Assembly (NCBI RefSeq): GCF_006345805.1
Contig: NC_042997.1
Location: forward strand, 41,850,001 to 41,914,000
DNA: 64,000 nucleotides
Origin: Octopus sinensis
Taxonomy: Eukaryota
Reading direction: 5' to 3'
Below, piece after piece: positions 22,196 through 44,136 of the stretch. The first letter of the stretch is position 1; every line of letters begins with the position of its first letter. Made by a program: the position numbers and the translations under genes. The notes beneath the pieces were generated by a model that was not told the DNA's origin, did not search any database, and was given only the letters and a program-made list of their open reading frames with translations.

Positions 22196-22339
22196 GATAT
22201 TTCAATTTGGCTCCTTGTTATAGACAAATGTTGGTGAATAAATCAGCTTCCTTTAAAAACCACAGTTTGGTTTCAATACCTGGCTATAGCCATGTCACTT
22301 CATTTACATCATTTATGTTTCCGGGAAAGGTAAGGCAGT

Positions 22340-22520
22340 GAGATGGCAGAATTGTCAGCATCCTGGGCAAAATGGTGTTAAACATTCTGAGTTCAAATTC
22401 TGCTGAGGTCGATTTTGCCTATCATCCTTTTGGGACCAATAAAATAAGTACCAGTTGAGCACTGGGGTCAATGCAATTGACTTGCCCTTTCCCTGAAATT
22501 GCTGACCATGTGCCAAAATT
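22340..22520 (+). mobile_element. SINE family B
   Basis: Same A/B boxes and central domain. Confidence 0.8.
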
Positions 22521-22947
22521 GGAAATCAATAGCTCCGGCTCCATTTCATACATCCCACAAAATCTCCAGGAAGGAGAGAATAAAAATGAAATGAGGCAAT
22601 TGGGAGCAGCTGTTTGTGTGCTGGCAATTTGGCACGGCTGACTGAACATTGAACTTGTTTTGGTGACAGTACTTTTTGGCATTGGAGGCACTCACTCACA
22701 CTCACTCTCACACACACACACACTCGTAAGTGCGTGCACAAATATACACATACAGAGAAGGAGAGAATGAGACACTACAACTTATTAACTGAACACTTTC
22801 CTTCTCCTCATACACATGAAGAGAAATATCTTCACACACAAACACAAAGAAAGATTAAGAGAGATTAAGAGAAAGAAAGAGAGAATTAGGGAAACATTAA
22901 AAAGTTTAATATCAGATACACCAGTGTAGAATCAACAATGCCATATA

Positions 22948-23165
22948 TGAGGGGGTGATGAAAAGTTCCTGGCTTTGGTTAAAAGAAAATACAGGAGGAT
23001 CAGTCAATTATGATTTTATTCAACATATTCCCCCTCTCAGATTCACACACTTATTGCAGTGGTCCTTCAGTTTTTCCAAGCCCTATAAAAGAACTTGGCA
23101 GGATGGGCCTCCTACCAGGCCTTTCACAATACCCTTAAAGCTAGGAACTTTTCAGCACCACCTCA
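22948..23165. mobile_element. Mariner-type MITE (Hsmar2/MADE2-like ends)
   Basis: TA|tgagggggtgatgaaaagttcctggcttt ... aaagctaggaacttttcagcaccacctca|TA. Confidence 0.8.
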
Positions 23166-23740
23166 TAAGTAGCAGCAAAACAGCTGTGCCTAAGAAAACC
23201 ATTCCATACATCAAGAATTGGACATGCTATTCGTGAAGAGGGAAAATAATGGTAAAAGGAAGCACTTTAGAACATCTCTTGTCTTTGGTATCTCATATTC
23301 TGTTAACTAATGAATGAATTACACTAGTTTTATGAGATGGTGGGAAAAAGAAACTCCTTTAAAAGGGCACTTAAAGAGGTAGTTGTTTCCAAAATTTTTA
23401 GACATTAAAAAACTGATAAAGACGAACTGAAGATTCTACTTTTGTTGTTTTATTAAAGGGCACTCAACTGTAAATAAATTTTCTTGTCAAAGTAGTGTGT
23501 TTAGAGCTTGGTGTTAAGCTTATATGTAAACTTTATAACAAACTTAAGAACATTGCTTGTGTTCAAATATTGACTAAAATCCAAGGAAAATGAAAGATAT
23601 TGTTGTCATTTTGAGATAAGAAGAGGAATGGCAAGGTTAAGTAAAAGTCATTGTAAGTGCCAGGCTTCATAGATTTAGTGACCATACTTTGTAGATTATC
23701 TTTAATACGTTATGTAAAGGAGAAGTATAGCATTCAGTGT

Positions 23741-23986
23741 GCTGTCCTTTAGTTCAGATGTGGCAGGGCTGACTACAGTATGTAACTGACAGAGGTGCAT
23801 GTGTGTGTATGGTATATGTAAGCCTGACAGGTGTGTTCGTATGTATAGAATATATATACATAGTGAGCTGTCCTTTACATCAGATGTGGCAGGGTTGACT
23901 ACGGTGTGTAATTGACAGAGGTGTGTGTGTGTTTTGTATATATGAGCCTGATAGGTGTGTTTGTATGTATAGAATAGATATACATG
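23741..23986. repeat. Two-copy tandem duplication, period 126 bp
   Basis: gctgtccttt...cagatgtggcaggg...gacagaggtg...gagcctga...gtatagaata occurs at 23741 and 23867. Confidence 0.9.
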
Positions 23987-25579
23987 CATTCATGAGTATG
24001 TGCATGCAGATACATATACATAGATGTTTGTGTGTGTGTGTGTGTGTGTGTGTGGATATGTCAGTTAATAGATTTGATAATGGACTTTAGGTGACATTTC
24101 CATAAAGAGGGTAGCATTTTTTGCAGTATTTAGGTGAGTCTTTGAAATAGTCATCCACTTCAACACCAATCAACTTTTCTATACTGTCTAAATTGTAACT
24201 GTGTTTAACAGTATTTATAGTACCAATTACCTTGAATACTAATGACCTTAGAACCTTGAACCAAAAATCACTGTCTTGAAAGACTGAGGTCATAGAATAA
24301 ATTGACTTGCTGACATTTCACAGTTGTTAAAGCCCCAATTTTTATCAGCATTTCTTTGATAACTAACAGTAATCTGCACATAGATTATTGGTTTTGCTTA
24401 AAATAAATATATGTCTATATTGAATTTTCAGCAAAGGACTAAACATTCAGAGGTGTATTTCACAAAACCTTAGATAATGTAGATACTTCTTAATTTTGAT
24501 GTTAATGTGAATACTTCCTCTTTCAAAAGAGTAAGTCAGTGTTTAACTTCAAAACCATTAAGCAAACTTATGGCCTCTGTTATCTGAAGTTATCGTGAGT
24601 CATAAAAGTAATTGCTTTGTGATTTAGCAGCGGTGAATGAATGAATGAAATTGGGGGGGCCTCTGATCCATGTGAGTACAGAAGAGCAGGATATTAGCAA
24701 TTATTACATCTCAGATAGGTTAACAAGTTAAGTGATTAATCATGCTAATAATATTAGATTCTCTAAGGTTGAAATATTTATTGCAGATTACTTAGATATA
24801 TTTTACTAGTTCAAGCTTAATTTGTATACAACCCATGAAAGTGAAAGAGTTTATTATTTTGACATTTTTTGAAAACTTAAAAACAAAAAAATAACCAAAG
24901 TCACACAAACAGTTATATTTTATTAGTAGAGTAAATAATCAAAGAAATGTGTGAATGTGAAAGAGTATATGTTGCTATTTCTGATGATGATCCTTTTTTC
25001 GTGGAAACTGCACATCTTATAACTTTCCAAAGCTACGTATCAAAGACCAGGCTCCTTCTTCAGGGACAAAAAAAGTTTTCATTCTTGTTCAGATGCTCTT
25101 CTACAAAGACTCACAGAAGAGTACCTCTCATATATCTAGGCTGTTGCTGCACATACAAACACCCAACACTGTTAACAAGAAAATTCATCAACCTAATAAG
25201 CAAAGATTCACACACTAATATGTTACAACCAGCGTTGGTGCTAGGAAGTGCAAGGCCCAATTAGAGAATTGTCAGTAGGGCCCTCTACTCTAAAAAAGCT
25301 GAAGATTGATGTTTTATGCTTTGTGTAATATGCCAGCCAAAAAGTACTGAAAGTTTGAGCCTCTACCATTAGCAACTATGATATACTAAAAAGTCAGCAT
25401 AGCATCGTCTGCTTGAATGTGTGCTTGGAGCCCTCTCTTGGTACAGGGCCCAATTTGAACATTTGTCTAATACGCTTAAAATCAGCCCTGGTTACAACCA
25501 CTAAGCTCATAGCCATATTAGTATCCTTCTTTCTCTATCTCTTCTACTGCTGTTACGATGACTTCTGCTCCTCTGAAAC

Positions 25580-25831
25580 ACTGGGTTGGTGCATAATTAT
25601 TGTGGATTTTTTTCAACAAATTTTATTCAACAAAAACAATAATATTTAACAAAGAACATCTTTAAGTGACGGTCAGACCATCTGACAAGCAAATGGGAAG
25701 CAGTAATTGAAGTAGATGGGGAATATGCTCTGGAATAATCATTTAAAGATGTTTTTGTTACATATTGTTATTGTTTTTGTTGAATAAAATTTGTTGAAAA
25801 AACGCCACAGTAATTATGAACCAACCCAATA
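25580..25831. mobile_element. Mariner-type MITE with long (about 90 bp) inverted ends
   Basis: ctgggttggtgcataattattgtgg... pairs with ...ccacagtaattatgaaccaacccaata. The terminus resembles the Hsmar1/MADE1 TIR. Confidence 0.8.
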
Positions 25832-26439
25832 AGTTTCATACCAATTCTATCCACCTCTTGCTTCCATGTTTCTTCCTATCTGCATCGTTATGTCTCACCT
25901 AACTTTCACATTAATACCTTTCTTGATCCTTGTTTACTATTACTATAGCTACCTGGAACCCACTCCTCCTCTTTTAGGTTCTTTCTACAGTCATCAATAT
26001 CAGCAATCTTACCAATCTGATAAAACTTTAAAAAATAAATCAACAAACTATAGACAAGCATCTGGAAAATATTCTTCAGCATATCTTCATGCTGCTGGAG
26101 CTATTTCATTTTACTTGCAGCAACTGAACATTTCATTCTACTTAACACACACATATACTAAATATTATGGCTTTAGCCTACAAATTTGATTGTAGTCACT
26201 AACTTTGAAAGTTCTGTGAAATTGACCAACAGTTTGATTGATTACGAGGACAAAACTGGGATGCAGTTTCCTCACAGTAGAACACACTCTCATAGTGCCA
26301 CATCATAATCAAAGAGAAATTTCTCAGAGAGGCCATTCTTTAGAGAATCAATTTTTGGTGCTCGCCAACTAATTCTAGAGTGTAGCTCAGTCAAATTGTT
26401 ATTAGTTAGAAATATGTGCTTTATACAATGGAATTAAGT

Positions 26440-26668
26440 TGAATCCTTTTAATAATGATTTCAAATTTTGCCACAAGGCCAGCAATTTCAGAAGAGGGGG
26501 TAAGTTGATTACATCAAGCTCAGTATTCAACTGGTACTTATATTATCAACCACAAAAGGATGAAAAGCAAAATCAACCTCGGCAGAATTTGAACTCAGAA
26601 TGTGAAGACGGACGAAATGCTGTTAAGCATTTCGTTTGGCATGTTAACAATTCTGCCAGCTCACTGCC
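26440..26668 (-). mobile_element. SINE family B
   Basis: Same modules on the minus strand. Confidence 0.8.
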
Positions 26669-28315
26669 TGAATTCTTTCAATAATGTTTTGAAACTAACT
26701 GAATTTCTTGGGTTGAGCTTAGTCGTATCTAGTGCCCATTGTCATTGCAGGAACTCTGAGACTAGAGGTGAAAATGAAGAAAACATTTGATGGGTTGTGG
26801 CTAACCACTTCTTTGATTCCTGTAAATTACCCAGCAGAACAACACACAGAGCAGCCAGTTTCAGTTATATCTGGTAGCAAGAATCAACAGGAGAACTATT
26901 TCCATGTGTACTTTCTAACCAAAAACTGGCTCTATACTCAACAAAGTGCAGAAGACGAAGCACAGCAAAATATCAAGTTCCATTCAAACTGGAGACTTGG
27001 TCTGAATAATTACAACAGAATAGACTCTGCTGAAAGATACCCAAGGGCTGGGTGGTGGTGTTAAACAAATGAGGTCATTACTATTTTATTGTGGTATACT
27101 GTTGTTGTTGCTTTGTCCAAAGTTTTCCCTGATTTAGCAAACCTATGTTCAAAGGCATTCCACTCATGACCATCTTGTCTTTTTTACAGACAAAGAGTAC
27201 CCTGGACCACAATATCCAATATGTTCTCTTTAGGACAGTAGTGTGCGATTTCAAGATTAGGCTGCTGTTTCTAGCAGGCTAAATGACCCTATAGTAGAGC
27301 CCCTTTGATGGCTCATCATGATACAAGGTCTTTTACCATACTACAAGCATCATTCACACACTTACACACACACACACACAAACACACAATATAACAATGA
27401 ACTGAAGACAATAGATCGCTCGAAGTATTCATTAGAATTAAAAATGCATTTTGCAAACTGCGTGATGTAATTAATGCCAGAATTAGATCTAATAGTAATG
27501 TAGTTGTTAAGTTACAAAGAAAATAGAAAAAGTCCTGTTGTCAACAAAGGATTTCCCTCTTTGTGCACAAATGGAAAATGGTATAAAGTGTGTAGACATA
27601 GTGTCATGCTATATGGCAGTTAAAGCAAATGAACAGGACATATAATGTTTGAATGCCAAACATACACACACACACAAACAAACACACCATGTTTCGTTTC
27701 TCTTTATCCTCTATGGCCTCCTTCAATCAAGGAAGGTTGCCATCTATATATATTTGTGCAATACTGGGCAGAGGAAGAATGGTAGTTACCCATGCAACTG
27801 TAGCCTTTCCGCTACACTGATGTTTAACCCAAAAGAAAGACCATAAAAGCTGAATAGAAACCTATTGTATATGTGTGAGTATATGTGAAACTTTGTTTGT
27901 TCCTCATTACTTGACAACCATTGTTGGTTTGTTTATGTCCCAGTGAATTAGCTGTCTAGCAAAAAGAGATCAACAGAATAAGTGCCAAACTTAAAAATAA
28001 TGACTGAAAACAAAAAAAAAAGTGTTCTGTTGCAGTCATTCAGTGAATAGGTTGTGATTACAGAGGTGATAGATCTAAATCCATTGTCATCTGTCTAAGC
28101 ACCAAAACCCCTGGCCTTTCATTTGAATGCATTTGACAGAATACACTTTGTTATAAGCACTGAGTGTTATATCTAAATGTTCCACTCTCTATTACAATAA
28201 TCAATGAGTCATGGCTTCTTTCTATCTTTTTTACTCCCACTCAAAAGAGCTTGAGCTCCATTAAGGAAACAGTGGCCATAGGTGTTGTCCCTTGTTTGTT
28301 GACTAAGCTATTTAA

Positions 28316-28535
28316 TCCGTTAGCATTCAAATTACTCTGTCAAATGTAATGCCAATTTACTCACATTGTTTTCAATTATTCATGCATTATCCAATAGCTT
28401 TGAGATTTCAATGATGTAATTGCATATTTTTAGAATGACATTGTAGGCTAGATCTGAGAAGCTACATCTGGTGAGTTTGAACATAAAACAGGTCGGATAT
28501 TCAGGCCTGATATGGCCACTTTGAATGCTAAAGGG
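28316..28535. mobile_element. piggyBac-type MITE
   Basis: ttaa|tccgttagc ... gctaaaggg|ttaa. Confidence 0.8.
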
Positions 28536-28620
28536 TTAAAAATTTATTTGAAATATGTCAAAAACATAATCTAGAAAAGAGGATCTAAAGAGCTGGACAT
28601 TGCCCAATATCCTAGATTAA

Positions 28621-29003
28621 TCCTTTAACATGATGCCAGTGTTTTGTAACTGGCATGTAAAAAGCAACCACTACACACTTGGAGTGGCTGGCATTAGGAA
28701 GGGAATCCAGTCATAGAAACCATGCCAAATTAGATTGGAACCTGGTACAGCTTACCAGTTTCAGTCAAACCGTCTGACCCATTCCAGCATGGAAAATGGA
28801 TGTTAAATGATGGTGATGATGAATACTCTGTCAAACATAGTGCTTGTTTCCTCCAATTGGTTTGAATGAATCATGTCTAATCTTGTAGTAACAAGATTTC
28901 AATGATATGATTGTATATTTTTACTGTACGGTAGGTGTGAAAGACTGAATGTGGCCAGTGTGAACGTAAAACATGCGTAATATATGGGTCTGATGCTAAA
29001 GGG
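28621..29003. mobile_element. piggyBac-type MITE interrupted by a (GAT)n-tailed SINE
   Basis: ttaa|tcctttaacat, SINE insert at about 28633-28821, MITE resumes at aatactctgtcaaa and ends gctaaaggg|ttaa. Confidence 0.75.
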
Positions 29004-29316
29004 TTAATAAAAAACAGAAAGGAAAGACATCTTGGTCAGTGCAAATATAAACCATGTATCAAGAAATGGATCTCGTGTTGATGATGAGTCTTATCTTTTT
29101 GCAGTGTTGGTTTATTTACATCCCCATAACTTAGCAGTTCAACAAAAGAGATCAACAGAATAAGTACTAGGCTCAATTTGTTTGACTAAACCCTTCAAGG
29201 CAGGGCCCTAGCGTGGCTGCAGTCCAATGACTGAAACAAGTAAAAGATAAAAGGTAAAAGCTTGGACCGCATCAACGCTATGAGAACAAGAAGACCTGTA
29301 TCAAAGAAACTATTAA

Positions 29317-29524
29317 CCCTTTAGTACTTAAACCAGGCCATATGCAGCCCAAATATCTTATCTGCTTTGTGTTCAAACTGGCCCGATCTGGCCTCTCACA
29401 CTTCCTCTGCATTGCCATTCTTAAAATAAACAATCACATCATTTAAATCTCAAAGCTATATAAGACAGTGTAGTGAATAAATAAGCATTGCATTTGACAG
29501 AATAATCTGAATGTGAAGAAAGGG
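29317..29524. mobile_element. piggyBac-type MITE
   Basis: ttaa|ccctttag ... aggg|ttaa. Confidence 0.8.
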
Positions 29525-30379
29525 TTAAATGTGATTGAACCCAAGACCACATGTTTGTGAAGCCAACTTCTTATCCATTCAGCCACACCTGTGCCCAAAC
29601 CATATGTTAAAACACACACACACAAGCGAACAAAAGAAGGGAAACAAAAGAAAACAGATAGCTCATTAAGCAGCAGATGTACTTAATAAACTCTGCTGTA
29701 AGAAATGAGGTCAGTGGTCAATACTGTTACCAATGGCAAAATAGGTTGGTGGAGAGTGATGGGGTGGGAGAATTCCAGTGGATATTTCAGGTGGAGTCTG
29801 TTTTAGCATAAAACAACTACATGGTTTCTTACTTATGGCAGATAAGAAAAGAGTAAATGAGAAAAAAGGACTAAGGGGAAAAAATAACATTGGGAGGGGG
29901 TGGGGGTGAATCTACAATAAAAACTACAATGAAATTGAGTTCCATACTTAATTGCTTAATTGTTAAAGAAGAAAATCAAAGTTATTTAGTAATGTCTAGC
30001 AGAAACAGAGACCAATAGAATAAGCACCAGGCTTAAAAAATAAACACTGGGGTTGATTTGTTCAACTAAACACCTCAAGATGGTACCCCAGCATGGTCAC
30101 AATCCAATGACTGAAACAAGTAAAAGATATAAAAGATGTCTGCATAAAGTCAATAGATGAAGAGGATCAGTGGATGAATGGAGAAGCAGTGTTGAGGATT
30201 TAGTTGTTTCTCTACAAACTCAGTTTGAAGCAGACAGAGGTCAACTTTATTTTCCAACTTTTCACAAAGTCAATAAAGTCTGAACCAGATAAGTATTGAA
30301 GCCAGTGTAATTGACAATTCACCATCCTTAGATGTGAGGTTTTGTGCCCAACATCAGAATTGAATATACATACAAATGC

Positions 30380-30990
30380 ACATAACCTATATGTTGTGAC
30401 GCACATACAATACATTCAGTCATTTTAACACACAGACACATACATACCTATTAGTTGTGTGACATACTTATAAACCTATTAGTTTATGACATATATTCAC
30501 AAACAAAGACCTATAAGTTTTATATAAAACACACATTAGTTTTATAACACGCACTGATGCAAAAATAGACAATTTTATAATATGCATACACCCAAACACA
30601 CATCCTACTTATTAGTTTTATGTGACATGCACACTACAAAACCACAGAGTTGTTAGTTTTAAATCACACACACACACACACACCTACATGAAAGTTTTAT
30701 AACATAAGCAGAGAACAATAAGTTTGAACACAAACATACACACACACATACATACATACAGAACTGTAAGTTTTATGACATAACTAGATGCATACATACA
30801 CATTGCTATTAGCTTTATAAAACACCCTACACACTAGTGTTACAATACACCCTCAGCATTTGTCAACATATGGGTATGTCAGATATCATTTCATACACAC
30901 GTACACAACAGTTGCATAACCCACATATGTAGCCGAGTTGGTTATAAAACACACACGTAATACATACACATATTGGTTTTATAACTTGAC
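30380..30990. repeat. Degenerate minisatellite: (T)ATTAGTTTTATAAC-like motif with CA-rich spacers
   Basis: About a dozen motif variants at irregular spacing of roughly 25-75 bp. Confidence 0.7.
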
Positions 30991-31304
30991 ACAGCTGCAC
31001 CTGTTATATTGTTGTTCAATTGATTCACTTATTAGAATACTCACCATTCAAGTAAAGAAAACTGTGGTAGTGGTTGGACTGCCAGGCCACTGCTAGTCCA
31101 GCAAACCTCGTCAGCTGGTAAATAACCAACCATTTAGCATAAAGCTATTGATTTGTGTTATATGGTGATGCTAACATCATGGAAATGGTTTATATTACTA
31201 ACATCTGTAAGAGGAAACTTTCACCCATCACTCCAGTTTAATGTTTCACTTTGAATTCTCTCAAATATACAAACTGTGACATTTGTTGTATATGTATTTA
31301 CTTG

Positions 31305-31745
31305 TTTTAGTCATTAGACTGCTGCCATGCTGGGGCACTGCCTTGAAAAGCTTAGCTGAACAATTCAACATCAGTGTGTTTTGTTTGTTTGTTTGTTTGT
31401 TTTTTTCTTTTTGAAGTTGGGTACTTATTCAGTTGGTCTAATCTGCCAAAACCACTAAGTTATAGACATAAACAAACCAGCACCAGTTGTCAAGTAGTGG
31501 AGGGAACAAATATGAGCATACAAATACAGACACGCACACACACACACACATATATATATAGAGAGAGAGATAGATATAGATATACACACACAATGGGCTT
31601 TCACAGAGTTTCCATCAACCACATTCACTCACAAGGTATTGATTACCCCAGGATAGAAGACACTTGCCCAAGGTGCCATGCAGTGGGACTGAATCCAAAA
31701 CTATATAATCACAAAGTGAGCTTCTTAACGACACAGCCATGGTTG
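31305..31745 (-). mobile_element. SINE family A, older divergent copy
   Basis: Tail, microsatellite and head recognisable on the minus strand. Confidence 0.75.
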
Positions 31746-32869
31746 CTGTGCCCCAGCATGGCCACAGCCTTACGACTGAAACATGTAAAAGAATAAAAGA
31801 ATTAAATAAATGGATCTCAGTCAATTTCAATGATGAGTATTTCGGCTGTTCCGACAAATGACCTGTTTACTCTTGTATAAGTGGCTGAGTATCCCACAGA
31901 CATTTGTAACCTTAATATATGCCTCAGGCACAATTAGTGAGATAGTGTGTGACAAGATGGCCCCTTCAGTTCAACTACAGTTCATCTTGATGTGTGGCCT
32001 CCATACAGTTTTTATCTACCCAGCCTCCCCCACAAAGCTTGGGTTGACCCAAGGTTACAATAATAGACACTTAAAAATGACCTATAGTAGGATTGAACAA
32101 GGGACTTCCTGATTATGAAATAAACTTTTTATCCCCTGGCCATACTTTTATCTATAATACACACACATAAGTATTGGTGTAGGTATGGAAGAGTGATTAA
32201 GTTCTATTATATATATATGAGAAATAGTGAATAAGGAAATATTAGAGACAGTATTAAGAATGAATAATAGTAGAGACAAATTAAGTCAAGCGGAGAACCA
32301 AAACCAGATTACAGGTTCAGTTTGCAAATAGTTTCTGTCCACAGCGCTTTCTAAGAATGTAATAATAATGCAAAATTCTATTCTATTTAAAGAGTATGTT
32401 TTTAGCATTTTTCCTTACATATCAATACAGTCTTGACTTCTTGATATGCAAAACAATGAAAATAGTAATAGTTCATAAATTCTATTTTATTTTAACCCTT
32501 TTGTAATAGTGTTAGATTAATAAAATGTGATAGTCTTCTCTTTATTAACACTATATCACCTGTTTTAATAATTCTTAATACTTCAAGTATTATGCTCATC
32601 ATCATTTAATGTCTAACTTGTATATTGGCAAGGGTTGAACAGTTTGACGAAGTCTTACAAATTGAAGGATTGCATCATGCACCATTGTCTATTTTGGCAT
32701 GGTTTCTGTGCCTGGATACCTTTCCTAATGCTAATCACTTTACAGAATGTATTGTGTGTGTGGAGGAGGGCACTAGCAAAGCAAAGGGCTTAAAGTGGAT
32801 CTTATAACTGAAGGAGAACAAGAGAAAGTGATGATTGTAAATCTTATGTTAAGAAAATGACAATATTTT

Positions 32870-33050
32870 TTCTACTATAGGCACAAGGCTTGTAATTTTG
32901 GGGGAGAGGGCTAGTTGAATACTTTGACCCTAGTGTTCATCTGACCCTGAAAGGATGAAAGGTAAAGTCAACCTTAGCAGTATTTGAACTCAGAATGTCA
33001 ACCTCAGCAGCATTTTGATTGATATGCTAACGATTCTGCCAACTTGCTCT
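32870..33050 (-). mobile_element. SINE family B, decayed
   Basis: aaaggatgaaaggtaaagtcaacc ... atttgaactcagaa. Confidence 0.75.
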
Positions 33051-33373
33051 TTATGACAAAATTGGAAGTGAACAGGCTTTAAGAATTCTTTATGCTTACA
33101 CAACGGTACTGCATATGCCAGCAATCATCATTGTCATTGCAGAATAACTGATATTTCAATAATTTATTTATAAAAGTATGAAAATGTTTTTGTTACATTA
33201 AACCCTAACCCTTAAATAATCTGAATAAGACTACTGAATAATGTCTTTCTGCATATTGATAATTTTAGTGCTATAAGGATTAACAACCTAAGCGGGTGTG
33301 AAATAGTTTCAATGATGCATGAAAAGTGGGCCACAGATTCTGTTAAAGTAGAAATTATTGAGATATCCCAGGC

Positions 33374-33438
33374 ACTCACCTGGAAAAAAATAAATGATAA
33401 AATAAAAAAAGAAAAGTAAAAAGAAAAAAAAAATTAGT
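33374..33438 (-). other. Candidate recursive splice site (zero-length exon / ratchet point)
   Basis: Minus strand reads ACTAAT, then about 50 nt of AG-free T-rich tract, then TTTTTTTCCAG|GTGAGT. It lies on the strand of, and inside, the inferred long intron. Confidence 0.5.
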
Positions 33439-33674
33439 CCTGTTTCAGAGGGACATTTACCTTTTGTATCTCTTCCTCGCACTTGAATGCCAGGCTTAAG
33501 ATATATCCTCAATAACAGCAAAAGAGGAAATATTTGAACAGCTGATATCAAAAGACATTCCTCTATAATTTATATGCTGCTCTCTGATGTTGATATTTTT
33601 TTACATTTTTTAGGTTAATTTCTCAATAAGCATATCACCTCAGAGCAAAGTTGGGTGGATAACATTTTAGAGAT

Positions 33675-34080
33675 GTACAGGTGCAAGCATGGCTGTGTGG
33701 CAAGAAGCTTGATTCTCAACCACATGGTTCAACCCTACTGCATGGCACCTAGGGCAAATGTCTTGTATGATAGCCCCAGGCTGACCAAAGCATTGTGAGA
33801 AGATTTGGTAGGCGAAAACTGGAAGAAGCTTGTCATATATGTATAGGTATGTGTTTGTGTTACAGTCTCTTTGGCTTGACCATTGCATAGCAGTTGTAAG
33901 CTAGTGTCATCATGATGCAAACAACATCCTTTGTATCCAATCATCCATGTGTCTGGTTATGGGGAAATATTACTTTACTTGGAAACAGGAAAGGCATCTG
34001 ACCATAGAAAATCCACCTCAACAAATTCCATCTGACCCATGCAAGCATGGAGAAGCAGACATTAAAATAATGATGATGAC
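33675..34080 (+). mobile_element. SINE with A head and (GAT)n-type tail
   Basis: Same module order as 1-410. Confidence 0.7.
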
Positions 34081-34884
34081 AATTCTGTGAAACCCAAACA
34101 TTAAGCCAATCCCTTTATAAATCGCCAGAATTCATAAAGATGGTGTTTGTCTCTTATTTCCATAGCAATAAGCTGATAACCAAGAATAAGATGCTATCAT
34201 GTCCAGCAGAGTTAACTTTGCAGTTAGGCAAAACTGAACTCAGTACTGCAAGTTAATGAACCACTCACCAATACAAGCTAATTAACTCCTCATCAATGCA
34301 ACATTGCTGTGGCTAGTGCTGGTTGCAGCAGGGAATTACACCAACCACAGAACCTATTCACAGACTTTTGAGGCAATGAAGGTTACATGGTTGCTTCAAC
34401 CTATAAGAAGTAGCAGTTAATTATCTCACAGATCACATCCTGTATGTTTTCGGAAAGGACCCACTGGATGTCATAGTTTTAGATATGCAATATTCAAGAA
34501 AAGACAAAATGATCGCAGTCAGAACATCATTGATTACAGTTCTGCTGGATCAGGGCTGACTTGAGACTAAACAACAACCTAGTCACAATTAAATGTCATC
34601 ACCATGGATACAACACAGTGCCATTAATAGGATCTGAACTATTGAACTCTCAGCTGGTTGCTAAGTATCCTATTGACTTGTCCACCCTCATGTACATATG
34701 CTCCCATTTAGCTATCTTCCATAGGCGACCAGTAAATGACATACCTAGTACCAGCTTATTTACCAACAGCAGACTAAGTACAGTTATGCATATACTGACC
34801 TCACAATGACATGAGTGTGTTATAAGAATTTTGGATCTTTACTTCAAGAATCTGAATTTATTATTTTTTAATTTTTTTTTTTTT

Positions 34885-35200
34885 TTACTTGTTTCAGTCA
34901 TTGGACTGCGACCATGCTGGAGCACTGTTTTGAAGAGTTTTCATCAAACAATTGACCACAGTATTTTTTTTTTTTAATCTAGTACTTATTCTATCAGTCT
35001 CTATGATTAACTGCCAAGTAACAGGTTAGTAAACTAACCAACATTAACCATAAAGTGGTGATGGAAACAAACAAAAAAGATATATACACACACATATATG
35101 TATATAAGCTCTAGTTTCTATCTACCATAGTCAGTCACAAAGCGTTGGATCAGTTAGGGGCTACAATAGAAGACACAGGTGTTGTGCAGTGGGACAGAGT
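34885..35200 (-). mobile_element. SINE family A, older divergent copy
   Basis: Tail and part of the head recognisable. Confidence 0.7.
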
Positions 35201-35464
35201 AGCTGTATGGTTAAGAAGCTTGCAAAAGGGTGAGGAGTAAAATGTAGGCAAATAGTGACTTCTGCTAAGATAATATTAGCAGTGAACCATGGACATTAGT
35301 GTATATATGTGGAGAAAAGTATTTCCAGAATTAATTCAAATACATAAGTACTGTATTTCATGACAAATATGGTTTTGAAAAAGTTAACTTTTGTGTTATC
35401 AAACACTGAAGAATTTAATAAAATAACAATAATTTCCTATTATTGCCAGCTAATTTACATTTAA

Positions 35465-35626
35465 CCCTCTTATACCAGCAATATCCGGCCAAAATATTCT
35501 ACCGGTTTTATGTTATTCTCAAAGTTAATCGCATCAAAATCTCAAAGCTATGAGATATTGCAAGATAAATCCTAAACAATGTGAATAAAGTATTTCATTT
35601 GACAGAGTAATCTGAATGCTGAAGGG
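35465..35626. mobile_element. piggyBac-type MITE, internally deleted
   Basis: ttaa|ccctct ... gctgaaggg|ttaa. Confidence 0.75.
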
Positions 35627-36556
35627 TTAAAAAAGGAGTAATAAATAAATTATTACACTTGTGAGACAGGTATAATAAGCTAATCAAATAGACTTTTGGA
35701 ATAGTTATCACTACTTCATGGAGAAGAAGGGCAAGGAGTTGGGTGATTGTTTAATAAGTTAATTACTAATCTTTCTGTAAATAAAAAAATTGGCAGTTGG
35801 TAATAGGAAAATACCAAAATAATTGTTATTAATAATTTAGAACATAAATTTTGTATGAAATTTTGATGGACGGTTTTAATTTACCTTATTTTCTGGCAGA
35901 CAAGTCAATGTAGTACACAATGTAACCATGTAGTGTAAACATTCAAACATTGTCCCTATCTTCCCAAATCCTACTGCATTTCACATAGAAGTTTTTGGTT
36001 TTCCAAAGTTGTGTTGATTTGTAAGTCAATCTACCATTTTTGGCAGTAAATTTTTGTCTGAAAAATTTAACTTGTGTGCTAGAAAATATGGTAGATCCCT
36101 TTAAAACAGGAAGTTTGTATTATAGAACCAGGGGCAGCCTCAGGCAAGTTTGTATCAAAAGGGTCAAATCACAATTGAATCTACTGAAACAATCTCTCTT
36201 ACTCATACTTGAAACAACAGATACATACCCAGAGGCAGATATGTGAACTACTGTGCAACAGGGTGTTATCTTAGTAGGACAGCTTAACAGACAGATTAAT
36301 TCATAAATAATTCTTTAACAAATTTAATCATGAACATTTTTAAGGATTGGTATCAAATTTTCAAAAGGACTGCGAAAATATGACATAATATATAATGAAA
36401 CAAGTTGAGTGTGAATTAAAATGGGAGTAAGAGAGAGATGTGTGTATATGCTCACACATCCAAATGTATATATATGTGCATGTGTATAAATATATATATA
36501 TATATACACACACAAACTTAAGCATATATATATATCTACACATACACTCACTAATG

Positions 36557-36595
<39 letters not shown>

Positions 36596-36984
36596 GCACA
36601 CACACTTTATATATATATATTGTAAATAATTTTATATAGAACTACAAAAATGAGAATAATTATGGAATGTTCTGATGGAGTCATGGGGTGCTGTCTGTGA
36701 AATATGATGTGTCTGGGAATTTTAAATCTAACTAAACCTGTCACTCTCCAAATCTGACCATAGCTGATTTTTCTCAGAGAGAAAAAGAGAATGTATAGAA
36801 TGTAGAAAAGAAAGAGAAAAGGAGAAGAAATGGTACTTTACCAACTCCAAAAAGATAAAAGGCAAACTTAACCTTGCGAAGATTTAAACTAACAACTCTG
36901 CCAACCTGCTGCCTGTACACATGTATGTATATACACATGTATAAATACAGACACACAAATCTATGTACAAATCCACATGCATAA

Positions 36985-37405
36985 TTCTTAAGAGGTTTGC
37001 TTTCCACCCTACCACATGGTTTCAGATTCAGTCCCATTGCATGGCCCTTGGTCAAGCTCTGAGTCAACCAAAAACCTTGAGTGGATTTGGTAAATGGAAA
37101 CTGAAAGGAACTTGTCATATATAAATGTATGAGTGTGCATGTATACATGTTACTGTCTCTTTGCCCTGACTTCTTGATGTCATGATAGCTGTAAACAAGT
37201 GTGATCATCATGCAAGCAGTGTCCGTCATTTACAATCTTCCTTGAAAACATATCTGGATAAGGGGAAATGTTGCCTTACTTGGAAACAGGTGAGGGTTTG
37301 TGATAGGAATGGCATTCAACCATACAAAATCTGCCTCAACAGAATTCCATCCAACTCATGCTAGCATGGAAAACTAGATGTTAAACTGATCGTCATCATC
37401 ATCAT
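36985..37405 (+). mobile_element. SINE with A head and (GAT)n-type tail
   Basis: Same module order as 1-410. Confidence 0.7.
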
Positions 37406-37458
37406 GATCATCATTAATTTTAATGTCTGTTGTCCATACTGGCAAGGGTTGGATGGTT

Positions 37459-37490
<32 letters not shown>

Positions 37491-37516
37491 AGTTTATATA
37501 ATTGCGCATAGAGGAA

Positions 37517-37757
37517 TACATTAATCAATGAAATTCCAAATTAGTCTGATTTTCACATTTTATTATTTACCATTTTCACAATTTTACAATATGGAAATAA
37601 ACTAGTACCTTCATGTGGACAGTTGCCAATGGTGGGACACAGCTCTCACTACATAAACCTCATGATTGCGTAAGGCATGAAAGTACTAATTTATTTCAAT
37701 ATTGTAAAAAAATTGTAAATAATAAAATGTGAAAATCAGACTAAATTGGAACTTCAT

Positions 37758-37768
<11 letters not shown>
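37517..37768. mobile_element. Foldback MITE with about 100-bp imperfect inverted arms
   Basis: aatgaaattccaaattagtctgattttcacattttattatttac... mirrored by ...gtaaataataaaatgtgaaaatcagactaaattggaacttcatt. Confidence 0.75.
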
Positions 37769-37788
<20 letters not shown>

Positions 37789-37790
<2 letters not shown>

Positions 37791-38939
37791 GGGGGTGGAC
37801 AAAATAATGGAAACACCTAGCATCATAGCATTATAATTTTGAAATATCTATAAAACCATGAAAAGTTTGTTTATTTTTATGTTTTGAATTTATTATTAGT
37901 GTTGCTTAATATGTTTTGCTAAAATTGCCGTTTCCTTTGAGATATCAGAAAAAGGTAATTAAAATTCATTAAAATGACAGATTTATCGGACTTTCATAGA
38001 GGTCAAATTGTTGGTGCTCTTATGCCAACAATTTGATGTTAGGGACTGTCAGACTCTTATGCGAATTGTTAGAAAGGATCACAAAATTACATCCAGCTCC
38101 AAAATTACTGCAGAGCTTAATGACCACCTCGAGAACCCAGTTTCCACAAAAACTGTTCGCTGGGAGCTGCATAAAGCCAGATTTTACAGGAGGGCTGCAA
38201 TTAGAAAACCACCACTTTCAAAAAAAAAAACCATTGCAAAGCGTTTAGAGTGGAGTAAAAACCTACAGAATTGGTCCCTAGAGCAGTGGAAGAATCTTAT
38301 TTTCTCGGATAAGTCATCCTTTACCTTATTTCCAACCGCCAGTTGAGCATACGTGTGGAGACAGCCAAAAGAAGCATTTGACCCAGACTGCCTTCTTACA
38401 ACTGTTAAACATGGAGGAAGATCTGTGATGATCTGGGGGTCTTATATCTTGGAAATCTGCCAGCCCAATGGTTTCCCTTCATGGCAGAATTAATAGTCAA
38501 GACTATTTAAACATTTTATCTGACCAAATTCATCCTATGGTTATGGAACTGTTTCCAGAGGGAAATGCAATCTTTCAAGATGACAATGCACCAATTCACA
38601 CAGCTGAAGTTGTTACAGAATGGTACGAGGAACATTCTAGTGAAGTTGAACATCTTATCTGGCCACCACAGTCCCCAGATCTCAATATTATTGAACATTT
38701 ATGGTGCATTTTAGAAAAACAAAGAAGGAGTCAATATCCTCCGCCATCATCACTACAAGAACTAGAGACCATTTTAGCTAAAGAATGGACAAAAATTCCT
38801 ATGGAAACAATTCAAACTTTGTCCGAGTCCATACCTTGTAGAATTTAAACTGTAATTACTGCCAAAGGTGATACTACCCTATATTAAAATAAATTTGCTT
38901 GAAATTTTAAGGCGTTTTCATTATTTTGTCCAACCCCTG
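37789..38939 (+). mobile_element. Tc1-family DNA transposon, both TIRs present, defective
   Basis: Terminal inverted repeats (t)agggggtggacaaaataatggaaacacc and ggcgttttcattattttgtccaacccctg, flanked by TA in a (TA)n context. Confidence 0.95.
37974..38887 (+). pseudogene. Tc1 DD34E transposase, disrupted
   Basis: MTDLSDFHRGQIVGA start, a deletion in the DNA-binding region, then FSDKSSF, FQDDNAPIH and SPDLNIIEHLW, split by frameshifts and stops. Confidence 0.92.
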
Positions 38940-39584
38940 TATATATATCTTCACATACTCAAACACGTATATATGCAGAGATATGGTCCTGTTGGGCTCA
39001 TTAGTTCCTGTCACAACATCTAACCCATGCCAGCATTGAACATGGACATTAAATGATGTTGATTGAATATGATCCAAAGTAGATTTGGCTGTTATTTCTA
39101 GATGATCTCAGGACCACATAGAAGCTCCCTTGTTGGCTCGTTACACTAGGCTAGATCAGTTAGGAGGCAGATGTTGCTTGTATTCATTTCCTGCAACATG
39201 AATACAGGCTATGTTGTGTTACAGCAATAATTCATTGCCTGACCACATTACCAATGTTGCACCAAAATCCTTTTATTTATTTAATTATTTGCTTAAAAAC
39301 ATTTTTATTTATGTTTGTGATTAGCAGCATGAAAGTCTAACATCTTAAGGATGGGGGCTGAGGCTTCCATCACAATCACACACCGACCCTCTTCCATATA
39401 CATGCAAAAAACCTGTCATATTTGTGTGTGCATTTTATAAATAAATGAATAAATATATATATATATATATATATATACATGTGTGTGGGTATATATGTGT
39501 GTATATATACCGAATAATTGTCACATATTATATTACAGATATGTGTATATGTGTATATGCATATAAGTATATGTATATATGTTT

Positions 39585-39718
39585 AGGAAGGGTATCCAGC
39601 TGTAGAAACATTGCCAGATCAGACTGGAGCCTGGTGCAGCCTTCTGGCTTCCCAGACCCCAGTCGAACCGTCCAACCCATGCTAGCATGGAAAGCAGACA
39701 CTAAATGATGATGATGAT
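39585..39718 (+). mobile_element. SINE family C, 3' part
   Basis: Near-identical to the 3' half of 7165-7432. Confidence 0.85.
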
Positions 39719-39801
39719 ATATGTATGTGTGTGTGTGTATATATATGAATGTATGTTTGTGTGTATACATATACATATGTATATCTGTGTGCATACGTAT
39801 G

Positions 39802-39838
<37 letters not shown>

Positions 39839-40414
39839 CACATACATACATACATACATATAATATTTTATGATATGCCCCCTCTCCAGTATTATTCTGT
39901 TATTATTCCTGCTAACTTCAAACCCTTTTATAATTCAGCATCTGATCATTGTAATCAGGTTCTCAACCAACCTGTTTTACACACCTATAGTATTCGTATC
40001 CCCAGTTGTTAACATCTGTTCTCATATCACAACCTCTCCCATATGCAATCATATAAACATACAAAGCACTTCTGCAAATCTTTTAACGCACTGACATGCA
40101 TGCATACAAGAACACCTTTAATATCTTCACTTAATACTAGTACCATACTGCGGGTACTAAATCTGAGTGGGAACTCAAACATTTTACCCAAGGTAATCTA
40201 GTACATCACTTTGGAAAATACATGCCATATGTTTGGATGACATCAAACCAGGTTTATAATTAGTAATGAAAATGTGAAATAGAAATAGTGGGGAAGTATA
40301 TATTAGTACTGTACCTCAAACATATATATGTGCATATCCCTGTTTATACAACTATAAGGAAAAAGTACTCAGTATGCAAAATAAGGTTAATTACAATAAT
40401 GGTGTAAAATTTTA

Positions 40415-40610
40415 GCACAAGGCCTGCAATTTTAGAAGGAAGGATTAAGTCAAATACACTCCAGTGCTCAATTGGTATCTTATTTTATTGACCCTGTAAG
40501 GATGAAAGACAAGGTTGATCCCAATAGGATTTGAGCTCAGAATGTAAAATGCCAGAAGAAATGCTGCTAATTATTTTTACAACATAATAACAAGTCTGTC
40601 AGCTCATTGC
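40415..40610 (-). mobile_element. SINE family B, decayed
   Basis: Same modules on the minus strand. Confidence 0.75.
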
Positions 40611-41805
40611 CTTAAGATTCATTGTCATTTAATATCCACTTTTCCATGCTTGCATGGGTCAGATGGAATTTACTGAGGCAAATTTTCTACTGCCAAATGC
40701 CCTTCATGTTATCAACCCTTGTTTCCATGACAAGCGTACACACACACACCTGATGGGCTTCTTTCAGTTTCCATCTACCAAATTCACTCATAAGGCTATG
40801 GTTGACTTGGTGCTATAATAGAAGATACTTACTCAAGGTGCAGTAAGTAGATTTGGTTGATGGAAACTGAAAGAAGTCCATCGTGTGTGTATGTGTGTGT
40901 GTGTGTTCCTTGTTTTGACATCACATGATAATTGTGAATGTATGTGGTTGTCATACACCATACAGGCAATGTCATTCATTTCTAATATTCTGCAGAAACA
41001 TGTCTGACTATGAGGAAAATATTGCTTACTTGGAAACAGATGAGGTTTGGTAACAGGAAGGGCACCCAGCTGTAGAAAATCTGCTTCGGTAAGCTCCCCC
41101 ATCCAACCCATGCAAGCATGAAAAAATTCACATTATGATGATATATTACATTGATTGACAAAACAATGAAGGTATCTGTGAATGCTGCAACAATTAACAG
41201 CCAAACCTCCTTAAAATTACGAGAGAGAGAGAGAGATTAGATGATGTATTCCTAGGTAAACTTTGTCAAAACGAAAATAAATAACAAAATGACTTATCAC
41301 TGAAATGTCTTTGAGTATAAGTCTGCTCAAACAGAGCTGATGTGGAGTGAAACAATAATAATAAGCAGTCAGATTTATTGACAAAATACATCATTTATAT
41401 GGAGGGAAATCATTCAATGGTTGTCAACATAAGTTGGCATTCTTGAAAGATTTACACCCATAATAAAATCTATTACCTACACTTTAATAAAGCAATATTT
41501 TGAGTCAATGAGAGAAACCGCATGTTGTCACACAACTTGTAGGAAATAGTTATTTTGCAACAAATTACACCCGAGTAAAAAAAAACCCCAGGATGATTAT
41601 GATTGGAATACCATAGATCATATATCAGCTACATCAAAAGTAACCACGGGTTAAACAGCAGTGCCAAAATATTTCACATAAGTCTATCAAACTTATTCCT
41701 TCTTATAGTTCTGATAATAAAACAAAGTAACTGCACTGCTTGCAATAAAAAGTAAAATTACAATATTTGATTATTAAATAAACAGTCAATCAATTTTTAA
41801 ATCCC

Positions 41806-41845
<40 letters not shown>

Positions 41846-41974
41846 TTGGTTTTGTTCCTCCTCATATTGTAATAGTTACAAGTTCACTCAGCATGAGGGT
41901 GGGGCTCACGTATCTGGGGTGGTGTTTTTTCAATACTCCCTCCACCACATACACAGTTATGGGCTGTATTAAAA

Positions 41975-42100
41975 TAGTGGCTGTGTGGTTAAGAAGGTTG
42001 CGGTTTCGGGTTCAGTTCCATGAAGCATCTTGAGCAAGTGTCTTTTACTATAGCCTTGTGAGTGAATTTGGTAGATGAAAGCTGTGTGGAACCCACTGCA

Positions 42101-42133
<33 letters not shown>

Positions 42134-42315
42134 GGATCACCACTTGACAATGGTAATTGTTTACATCTCTGTAACTTAGCAGTTCAGTAAAAGAGGCTGA
42201 TGGAATAAGTACCATTCTTCAAAAAATAAGTACTGGTGTCAACATGTTTGACTAAACCCTTCAATGTGGTGCTCCAGTATGGCCAAAGTCCAGTGACTGA
42301 AGCAAGTAAAAGATG
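41975..42315 (+). mobile_element. SINE family A, older divergent copy
   Basis: Head, (TG)n and tail recognisable. Confidence 0.75.
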
Positions 42316-42626
42316 ATCCTGATAAAGAACCCTTCACTCATCAACACAATTCAATAATTTACCTATCTTCAAAACAGCAGATAAAAGCAAGTTCTTTCGC
42401 TATTCTGCTGCTATTACAATAGTTGGTGATCTTTCAGAGAAGGTCTATCAAAATTGAAAGTGTTTGGCAATTTCTGTAGAAAATTTTAATTCCTTTAATT
42501 TTTTTTCAGCTGAATTGCTTATGTTTATGTATTTTTTGTGCACATTTGTATATTTATGTATGGTTGTGTTATACATACATACTCAAATACACACACATAC
42601 ACAAATACAAATACACACACACACAT

Positions 42627-43044
42627 ACTCTTTACTCTCTTTTTACTCTTTTACTTGTTTCAGTCATTTGACTGCAGCCATGCTGGAGCACCGCCTTTAA
42701 TCGAACAACTCGACGCCGGGACTTATTCTTTTGTTAGCCCAGTACTTATTCTATCGGTCTCTTTTGCCGAACTGCAAGTAATGGGGACATAAAAACACCA
42801 GCATCAGTTGTCAAGCAATGCTAGGGGGACAAACACAGACACACAAACACACACACATACATATATATATATACACATATACGACGGGCTTCTTTCAGTT
42901 TCCGCCTACCAAATCCACTCACAAGGCTTTGGTCGGCCCGAAACTATAGTAGAAGACACTTGCCCAAGGTGCCACGCAGTGGGACTGAACCCGGAACCAT
43001 GTGGTTGGTAAACAAGCTACTTACCACACAGCCACTCCTGCGCC
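42627..43044 (-). mobile_element. SINE family A, full length
   Basis: Same head, core and tail. Confidence 0.9.
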
Positions 43045-44136
43045 TAAATATATATATATATATATACACACATACACACACAAAAAGAAAATACATAAAG
43101 ATAAGTGATCCTTCTGAAAAAAAAAATTTAAGAAATAAAAATTATTTTATGAAAATTGCAGAACAAATACTTTCAGTCATGATAGACTTTCTCTGAAAGA
43201 TTGCCCAATAATTTATGCTCGTCTAAACATTTTGATTCTACACTTTCAAAAAAAATACATCACTCACTTCTTCCCCTTATTCTGTCTTCATCCAAAACCC
43301 TGCACTTGGTGTTTTGCCCAATTCTTCCTGTCTAGAACTTGCAGTCTTCAAGGGAAATATCTTCCCCATTTATACTCCAGCCTCAATTATTGAGCTTCTG
43401 TCAGCACCAACCTTAAATGGGATTAATTTTAACTGTTACCTATTTCACCAATGAAGCAAGGCCTAGAAAGGTTATGAGGACAATCTTTTAACTTCAATCT
43501 AAGATGTAAAAATAATACTCCTGATTTATATTTACAAAATCCCTTTATTATTGTAGTTTGTAATGACACCTGTCACTAAAACAACATTCAAGGCTGTGTT
43601 GTTTATCCACAACCTTTGCAGAACTTACTTATAGTTTTATATTTTCACTGTGTTATGGAAAGCAGGTCATCTCTCAATAAACTTCGCCCACAATAGTCTT
43701 TCAAGTTTTTCAGAGATGTTTACCAGTAATACAAAGTATTGCATTTGAAATGGAATTTAGGACATTTGCGTTTTAAATGACTTACTAAAAATCAACCGTA
43801 GCTTTGTACACATCAGTTTATATTTTGTGCCCTGCCCTGTTTTGATTATCTGGCAAACTAGTTTTGCTTGATCAATAGCTACAACATACACTTATTCGTC
43901 AAATATATCTTTCCTGTGTTGTATGTCTAAGATTTTGTCACCTGTAGCTCCCCAGCCTTATTTAAACCCAAATTTCTTAGTCTATTTCAATACTATTAAG
44001 CAATTATTTAAACATGTACTACTCAGTAGGTTTCCTTATTCCTTAATTATAATCTTCTGACTCAATACATAATGTTACAATCTTCAAAACATCTGACAGT
44101 CAAGTATTTCAATAAGGATGGCCTTCTTCATGGCAT

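What the first reader, a model, noticed from the sequence alone, without database searches (positions are those of the whole stretch)
33374..33438. Textbook recursive splice site in a roughly 47-kb intron
The minus strand reads GGACTAAT-TTTTTTTTTCTTTTTACTTTTCTTTTTTTATTTTATCATTTATTTTTTTCCAG|GTGAGT. That is a branch-point consensus, about 50 nt of AG-free pyrimidine tract and CAG, followed immediately by a full donor consensus. It lies in unique sequence, on the host strand, and would split the inferred intron into about 15 kb and 32 kb. Recursive splicing is established in Drosophila and in long vertebrate neural introns; I am not aware of it being characterised in cephalopods. Function here is inference.
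Basis: partly seen in the sequence, partly recalled or inferred. Interest (0 to 1): 0.8.

Follow-up and report, generated by a model that had tools for sequence, protein, structure and literature searches.

The report
Candidate recursive splice site, unproven
Deep inside an inferred 47-kb first intron lies a sequence that matches the fly "ratchet point" signal for removing a long intron in two steps, but no RNA or cross-species data could be reached, so its use is a well-founded guess.

Summary
The sequence is exactly as described. On the minus strand, a 52-nt pyrimidine tract (58 nt without AG) ends in CAG|GTGAGT, with AG at 33381-33380 and GT at 33379-33378.

The 9-mer alone occurs at chance frequency. 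The combination does not. Of 413 AG|GT sites on both strands, this one ranks first for donor strength and first for upstream pyrimidine content (35/40, next best 29). That gives roughly 0.002 per window, judged after the fact.

It lies in window-unique sequence, on the strand of the inferred host gene. That gene has a CpG-rich exon 1 ending at 48473 or 48468 and an exon 2 at 996-870, which is conserved in a relative. The site would split a 47,476-nt intron into 15,093 and 32,383 nt.

It meets most fly ratchet-point sequence criteria tested, including TT at -5/-6, and the donor is regenerated after ligation. No convincing downstream "RS-exon" donor is present.

Every route to orthologous DNA or transcripts failed, and so did the controls, so conservation and use remain untested. 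The cephalopod origin was not verified either.

Verdict: a good candidate for a known mechanism, with about 0.4 probability of real use. Chance juxtaposition is the main rival.

The parts
33374..33382 (-). Core CAG|GTGAGT. The acceptor AG is at 33381-33380 and is followed directly by the donor GTGAGT at 33379-33374.
   Evidence: One search gives the sequence. In one search it is the best donor-like 9-mer of 7,442 GT sites on both strands (approximate PWM, 13.52 bits). In one search it ranks first of 413 AG|GT sites.
33382..33433 (-). Polypyrimidine tract of 52 nt: 47 pyrimidines, 5 A, no G. TT is at -5/-6. The AG-free zone of 58 nt reaches 33439.
   Evidence: 35/40 Y, next-best AG|GT site 29/40. 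TRF sees it as a low-complexity 19-nt period.
33402..33437 (-). Candidate branch points matching yUnAy: CTAAT (A33434, -55), TTTAC (A33417, -38) and TTTAT (A33403, -24).
   Evidence: Read. Any A in a T tract matches this pattern, so it does not discriminate. Fly ratchet-point branch points lie at -36 to -21.
48468..48660 (-). Inferred exon 1; its 5' end is not defined. It is the CpG-richest unique spot of the window and ends in tandem donors: AAA|GTAAGG (exon ends at 48473) and AAG|GTGAGC (exon ends at 48468).
   Evidence: One search gives the sequence. One search shows 20 CpG per 300 nt, o/e 1.2-1.4 against 0.36 overall. One search scores the donor at 11.83, sixth best in the window. One search shows it is unique.
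870..996 (-). Exon 2. The acceptor AG is at 998-997 and the ATG at 962-960. It encodes 31 aa resembling the start of a SAM domain (sub-threshold) and ends at donor GAG|GTAAGG.
   Evidence: It is conserved at 28/31 aa, with an intact acceptor and donor, in Logan contig L001 from run SRR11869391.
33380..48472 (-). Proposed first recursive segment, 15,093 nt (15,088 nt if the donor at 48467 is used).
   Evidence: Arithmetic.
997..33379 (-). Proposed second recursive segment, 32,383 nt, removed from the regenerated donor (AAA|GTGAGT or AAG|GTGAGT).
33204..33212 (-). Only weak candidate for a downstream RS-exon donor: AGG|GTTAGG, 170 nt after the ratchet point. A second candidate, TGT|GTAAGC, lies at 33099 (+280).
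   Evidence: 6.06 bits, 96th percentile of all GTs. About half of random 300-nt stretches would hold one this good.

Best explanation
The site is a zero-nucleotide recursive splice site (ratchet point) in the first intron of a minus-strand gene whose second exon opens a SAM-like domain.

Proposed mechanism, all inferred:
1. RNA polymerase transcribes the strong acceptor at 33380 about 15 kb after exon 1. That is 32 kb before the acceptor of exon 2 exists.
2. The exon 1 donor (48472 or 48467) is therefore spliced first to AG 33381-33380, using a branch point in or just upstream of the T tract. This releases a 15.1-kb lariat.
3. Ligation places exon 1 directly in front of GTGAGT and regenerates a strong donor (AAA|GTGAGT or AAG|GTGAGT).
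4. That donor is then spliced to the exon 2 acceptor at 997, removing the remaining 32.4 kb.
5. The mature mRNA is identical to the product of one-step splicing.

Shown: the sequence, its rarity within the window, its strand, the reality of exon 2, and the regenerated donor. Inferred: that exon 1 and exon 2 belong to one transcript, and that the site is used at all.
For: - Sequence: full-consensus acceptor plus donor, with TT at -5/-6, a feature of 99.5% of fly ratchet points.
- Rank: first of 413 AG|GT sites in both donor score and pyrimidine content. It is the only one of 13 AGGTRAG sites with a Y tract.
- Geometry: fly recursive introns span 11-133 kb with a mean of 45 kb, and their segments average 18 kb. 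Here the intron is 47.5 kb, split into 15.1 and 32.4 kb.
- Prevalence in flies: 63% of introns longer than 40 kb carry a recursive site.
- Human parallel: recursive splicing is more frequent in first introns whose upstream donor has CG-rich flanks. Here it is a first intron behind a CpG island.
- Host strand: exon 2 and its acceptor are conserved. The donors at the CpG island are on the minus strand. LINE and Tc1/mariner remnants inside the intron all lie on the + strand, antisense to the host, as is usual for introns. Long Y tracts form 12 clusters on the minus strand against 3 on the plus strand.
- Not a repeat copy within the window, and no RNA gene at the site.
- The regenerated donor is strong.
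Against: - No RNA evidence of any kind and no conservation data. Every route failed, and so did the controls.
- The core 9-mer occurs at chance frequency. The post hoc probability of about 0.002 per window implies many chance sites genome-wide, and the number of windows the first stage read is unknown.
- No good downstream donor lies within 170 nt to define the cryptic RS-exon that current fly and vertebrate models require.
- The best branch-point match is at -55, outside the fly range.
- Three other acceptor-like sites with equally long Y tracts lie on the same strand at 45470, 36772 and 20027, so strong-looking acceptors arise here without obvious use.
- In mammals only nine fully suppressed intronic ratchet points were considered definitive, so a motif alone predicts poorly outside flies.
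- The link between exon 1 and exon 2 is inferred.
Confidence: 0.4

Rival explanations
1. Chance juxtaposition. A low-complexity T-rich tract (A-rich on the + strand) happens to end in CAGGTGAGT. The site is ignored by the spliceosome or used only as splicing noise, and it is not under selection.
For: - YAGGTRAGT occurs at the shuffled expectation.
- The tract is low complexity and is one of 12 such clusters on this strand.
- The window-level probability of about 0.002 is post hoc and scales to tens or hundreds of sites per genome.
- There is no RS-exon donor nearby.
- No conservation could be shown.
Against: - The site ranks first on two independent measures among 413 AG|GT sites, by a wide margin (35 against 29 of 40 Y).
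- It is on the sense strand.
- Its geometry is typical of fly ratchet points.
- A strong acceptor transcribed 32 kb ahead of the true one has a large kinetic head start, so complete neglect would itself need explaining (inference).
Confidence: 0.35
2. The AG at 33380 is the acceptor of an unannotated alternative or cryptic exon that begins with GTGAGT, like the Ubx mI/mII exons or a vertebrate RS-exon. Such an exon would be 170 or 280 nt long and would sometimes be included in the 5' part of the mRNA.
For: - Weak donors lie at +170 (AGG|GTTAGG) and +280 (TGT|GTAAGC).
- Current models hold that ratchet points are recognised through such exons.
- If the ATG at 962 is the start codon, inclusion would alter only the 5' UTR and would be tolerated.
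Against: - Both donors are weak and no better than expected by chance in 300 nt.
- Neither the six-frame search of this segment nor the single-frame search of the 80-aa ORF across the site found any protein or ORF relative.
- The far stronger GTGAGT donor at the exon start should win the competition.
Confidence: 0.1
3. The site is not in the host pre-mRNA on this strand. Exon 2 is fed from another first exon lying between 33 kb and 1 kb, or the CpG island at 48.5 kb belongs to a different transcript. The motif would then be intergenic or antisense and irrelevant.
For: - No transcript links exon 1 to exon 2.
- The search with exon 2 found no annotated or transcript-derived protein, only a genomic ORF.
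- Other strong minus-strand donors exist at 16276, 6738 and 21319.
Against: - The only unique CpG island in 64 kb sits at 48.4-48.8 kb, with two strong minus-strand donors at its edge.
- The other CpG-dense windows overlap, at least in part, sequence repeated within the window.
- Transposon ORFs are on the + strand and Y tracts are in excess on the minus strand, both consistent with minus-strand transcription across 3-46 kb.
Confidence: 0.15

Closest known systems
Drosophila zero-nucleotide ratchet points (Burnette 2005; Duff 2015; Pai 2018)
   Same: Acceptor and donor juxtaposed around AG|GT, an unusually long pyrimidine tract, TT at -5/-6, a strong GTRAGT donor, a sense-strand position deep in an intron of about 45 kb, and segments of 15-32 kb.
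   Different: No junction, saw-tooth, lariat or conservation evidence. No evident cryptic RS-exon donor at about 50 nt. The strict branch-point match is at -55 rather than -21 to -36. The taxon is presumably not an insect.
Vertebrate recursive sites with RS-exons (Sibley 2015, as summarised in Joseph 2021, PMC8605326)
   Same: A long first intron, a regenerated donor, and possible competition with a downstream donor. First-intron position and CG-rich donor flanks match the human trend.
   Different: Vertebrate sites depend on a defined RS-exon, and only nine fully suppressed intronic ones were considered definitive. Here the candidate RS-exon donors are weak.
Predicted recursive site in the locust NPF1 230-kb intron (PMC8892266)
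   Same: A motif-based prediction outside Drosophila, in a genome with expanded introns.
   Different: The locust site had some wet-lab support from U2AF65 RNA immunoprecipitation. This site has none.
Cryptic acceptors born from antisense retroposon A-tails (Alu-type exonisation; own knowledge)
   Same: The tract is an A-rich, AATAAA-containing run on the opposite strand, in an intron full of + strand retroelements.
   Different: No repeat body, target-site duplication or second copy was found next to the tract. No genome-wide repeat library was available to settle the point.

Membership tests
Zero-nucleotide ratchet point (fly type) | 3' and 5' splice-site consensus juxtaposed at AG|GT | tested here: met
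   CAG|GTGAGT at 33382-33374. It has the top donor score of 7,442 GT sites.
Zero-nucleotide ratchet point (fly type) | Prominent pyrimidine tract with TT at -5/-6 (99.5% of fly sites) | tested here: met
   52-nt tract, 35/40 Y, TT at 33385-33384.
Zero-nucleotide ratchet point (fly type) | Lies on the sense strand of a long (>11 kb) intron | tested here: inconclusive
   The intron of 47,476 nt is inferred from the CpG-island exon 1 and the conserved exon 2. No transcript was available.
Zero-nucleotide ratchet point (fly type) | Ligation to the upstream exon regenerates a functional donor | tested here: met
   AAA|GTGAGT or AAG|GTGAGT, in silico.
Zero-nucleotide ratchet point (fly type) | Exon-to-ratchet-point junction reads, saw-tooth read density, recursive lariats | not testable with these tools
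   No RNA-seq access. The protein and ORF collection held no transcript-derived product of this gene.
Zero-nucleotide ratchet point (fly type) | Motif conserved more strongly than flanking intron | not testable with these tools
   Six-frame handles for the site gave no hits, and neither did the control segments and exon 1. Metagenome scans for the site and for an exon 2 control were both empty. The representative-protein search was empty. The negatives are therefore uninformative.
Zero-nucleotide ratchet point (fly type) | Branch point 21-36 nt upstream | tested here: inconclusive
   yUnAy matches lie at -24 and -38, and the best match (CTAAT) at -55. The pattern is not discriminating in a T tract.
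Zero-nucleotide ratchet point (fly type) / vertebrate RS-exon site | Short cryptic RS-exon closed by a weaker downstream donor (about 50 nt in flies) | tested here: inconclusive
   No donor scoring above 0 lies within 170 nt. AGG|GTTAGG lies at +170 (6.06 bits) and TGT|GTAAGC at +280. The PWM is approximate and not species-specific.
Antisense retroposon-tail cryptic acceptor | The tract is the A-tail of a recognisable repeat on the other strand, with target-site duplication | tested here: not met
   Segment 33045-33675 has no other copy in the window and no flanking direct repeat. A genome-wide repeat library was not available.

The most novel reading that the evidence does not exclude
The site is a constitutively used, evolutionarily conserved zero-nucleotide ratchet point in a cephalopod. 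It would be the first documented outside insects and vertebrates. That would imply fly-type recursive splicing is either ancestral to bilaterians or was recruited again when cephalopod introns expanded. Many long cephalopod genes might then depend on it.
Probability: 0.25. Interest if true: 0.6.

Novelty: new member of a known kind. Interest (0 to 1): 0.35.

Why it matters
Recursive splicing is documented in Drosophila, mouse and human, and predicted in locust. The paper library held nothing on cephalopods or molluscs.

A verified site here would extend the mechanism to a third major animal lineage. It would also give a concrete locus for asking how genomes with very long introns keep splicing accurate.

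On its own this is a single motif. Its value is as a seed for a genome-wide sense-versus-antisense scan and for one cheap RT-PCR.

Tried and rejected
1. Fetching the orthologous site through ORF handles. A six-frame translation of the unique segment 33045-33675, with the T tract masked, was searched against 5.8 billion proteins and gave no hit at E<=10. A control query covering neighbouring unique segments and exon 1 also gave no hit. The method simply does not reach deep-intron sequence of the one relative available, which is about 80-86% identical near exon 2.
2. A representative-protein search with the 80-aa ORF across the site gave 0 hits.
3. Exact look-ups of window ORFs (the 126-aa transposase remnant 5 kb away and the 295-aa LINE ORF), meant to obtain an annotated same-species locus, were not on record.
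4. Metagenome scans for a 27-mer across the site and for a conserved exon 2 24-mer as control were both empty.
5. Retroposon-tail origin: no in-window repeat copy and no target-site duplication. It is not excluded genome-wide.
6. An RNA gene at the site: the Rfam hits in 30-37 kb are all sub-threshold matches to low-complexity CA/TA repeats elsewhere. No tRNA was found.
7. Identifying the host gene and taxon: exon 2 gives only sub-threshold SAM matches, and no named homologue was found. The run accession was not traceable in the literature.
8. Burnette 2005 and Sibley 2015 could not be read. Their content is cited only through Duff 2014 and Joseph 2021.

Full report
**Observation.**
On the minus strand, 33440-33374 reads GGACTAAT, then a 52-nt tract of 47 pyrimidines and 5 A, then AG|GTGAGT. 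AG is at 33381-33380 and GT at 33379-33378. The nearest upstream AG is at 33441-33440, which leaves 58 AG-free nucleotides. TT occupies -5/-6.

**Is it more than chance?**
- The core is not. YAGGTRAGT occurs twice on both strands against 2.39 expected from dinucleotide shuffles. With a 10-nt pyrimidine run it occurs once against 0.41 expected.
- The rare thing is the combination with a very long tract. Only 82 positions in 15 clusters of the 128 kb have at least 35/40 pyrimidines without an AG.
- Multiplied by about 3e-5 per position for AGGTRAGT, this gives about 0.0025 per window.
- A non-parametric view agrees. Of 413 AG|GT tetramers, this site ranks first for donor score (13.52 bits on an approximate matrix) and first for upstream pyrimidines (35/40, next best 29). 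The chance of one site topping both lists is 1/413.
- These figures are post hoc. Extrapolated, they still allow tens to hundreds of chance sites in a gigabase-scale genome, and I do not know how many windows the first stage read.

**Surroundings.**
- The site lies in a 631-nt segment (33045-33675) with no other copy in the window. Interspersed repeats flank it at 32942-33044 and 33676-33860.
- I found no target-site duplication or repeat body that would make the A-rich + strand run a retroposon tail.
- No RNA family or tRNA lies at the site.

**The host intron.**
- Exon 2 (996-870, minus strand) has a good acceptor, an ATG at 962, 31 codons that weakly resemble the start of a SAM domain, and a GAG|GTAAGG donor.
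- It is real. A Logan genomic contig from a related organism (run SRR11869391) keeps 28 of 31 residues, the acceptor and the donor. The flanking intron is only about 80-86% identical.
- Exon 1 is inferred. The only unique CpG island of the window lies at 48.4-48.8 kb (o/e 1.2-1.4 against 0.36 overall). It ends on the minus strand in two donors 5 nt apart, AAA|GTAAGG and AAG|GTGAGC.
- Three observations are consistent with minus-strand transcription across the region. All LINE and Tc1/mariner ORF remnants between 8 and 39 kb lie on the + strand. Long pyrimidine tracts form 12 clusters on the minus strand against 3 on the plus strand.
- No transcript joining exon 1 to exon 2 could be found.

**Mechanism proposed.**
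- The acceptor at 33380 is transcribed 15 kb after exon 1 and 32 kb before the exon 2 acceptor, so it should be met first.
- Splicing to it would place exon 1 in front of GTGAGT and regenerate AAA|GTGAGT or AAG|GTGAGT.
- A second reaction would then remove the remaining 32,383 nt.
- A strong intronic acceptor is harmless only if what follows it can be removed. That is a reason why such a pair, even if born by chance, would persist and be used. This whole paragraph is inference.

**Comparison with known systems.**
- Fly ratchet points have the same architecture. There are 197 sites in introns of 11-133 kb (mean 45 kb), with segments averaging 18 kb. TT is at -5/-6 in 99.5% of them, and branch points lie at -36 to -21.
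- In flies, 63% of introns longer than 40 kb carry a recursive site.
- The present site meets the sequence criteria and the geometry.
- Two features are not clearly met. The strict branch-point match is at -55, although yUnAy matches exist at -38 and -24. There is also no convincing downstream donor to define the roughly 50-nt cryptic RS-exon that current models require. The best candidates are AGG|GTTAGG at +170 and TGT|GTAAGC at +280, no better than chance.
- Outside flies a motif alone predicts poorly. Only nine fully suppressed intronic sites were considered definitive in mammals, though newer work suggests more. Human recursive splicing favours first introns with CG-rich donor flanks, as here.
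- Three other acceptor-like sites with equally long tracts on the same strand (45470, 36772, 20027) show that strong-looking acceptors arise here without obvious use.

**Conservation and expression.**
I could not test either.
- Six-frame ORF handles for the site gave nothing, and neither did control segments including exon 1.
- The 80-aa ORF across the site gave nothing.
- Exact look-ups of nearby ORFs were not on record.
- Metagenome scans for the site and for an exon 2 control were both empty.
- Because the controls failed too, these negatives say nothing about conservation.
- The taxon could not be verified either.

**Verdict.**
- I give about 0.4 to real recursive use. Chance juxtaposition gets 0.35, a cryptic or alternative exon acceptor 0.1, and a site that is not transcribed on this strand 0.15.
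- If true, it is a new member of a known kind in an undocumented lineage. The paper library holds no report of recursive splicing in cephalopods or molluscs.
- The decisive tests are junction, saw-tooth and lariat reads in nascent RNA, one RT-PCR, alignment to related genomes, and a genome-wide sense-versus-antisense motif scan.

Noticed in passing
window 48697-48468 and 996-870, minus strand: Exon 1 ends in tandem donors 5 nt apart. If the distal one is used (exon ends at 48468), an ORF from ATG 48697 (MYFTAVSF...) runs without a stop through exon 1 into the frame of the exon 2 ATG. That would be a possible 88-aa N-terminal extension. With the proximal donor, that frame has a stop in exon 1. 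The single substitution in the 34 nt between the exon 2 acceptor and the ATG in the relative (CAT to CAC) is synonymous in this frame.
   Followed up: partly
window 48305-48349, plus strand: A strong acceptor-like site on the opposite strand lies just beside exon 1: a 40-nt pyrimidine tract ending in TTTTCCCTGCAG|TTGTCAAG. It could be an exon of an antisense transcript, or chance.
   Followed up: no
window 8272-10690, 14909-15757 and 38008-38848, plus strand: There are LINE remnants (Exo_endo_phos, RVT_1, DUF6451) and Tc1/mariner-type transposase remnants (HTH_Tnp_Tc3_2, DDE_3). All lie on the + strand, antisense to the inferred host gene.
   Followed up: partly
window 33676-33860, with copies at 61966-62157, 43045-42853, 16861-17044, 18497-18670, 3605-3430, 44531-44339, 20584-20411 and others: An interspersed repeat of about 190 nt is present in at least 10 copies at 75-78% identity, in both orientations. 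Self-matching repeats cover about 31% of the window. ARAGORN found no tRNA gene anywhere in the window.
   Followed up: partly
window 60600-61470: A microsatellite block of about 0.9 kb, rich in TA, CA and TATG, has a GC content of 0.27 in that 2-kb bin. Smaller CA/TA blocks lie at 19.2-19.7 kb, 31.5 kb and 36.4-36.6 kb. These give sub-threshold Rfam matches to mir-297 and mir-466, which are artefacts of low complexity.
   Followed up: partly
whole window: The genome is strongly CpG-depleted (o/e 0.36). The most CpG-dense window, and the one lying in window-unique sequence, is at 48.4-48.8 kb. Long AG-free pyrimidine tracts are four times more frequent on the minus strand (12 clusters) than on the plus strand (3).
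   Followed up: partly
window 45470, 36772 and 20027, minus strand: Three further acceptor-like sites lie on the host strand inside the same intron, each with at least 35/40 pyrimidines and an AG-free zone. None is followed by a donor. They are potential cryptic-exon acceptors, or evidence that such tracts are common and unused here.
   Followed up: no
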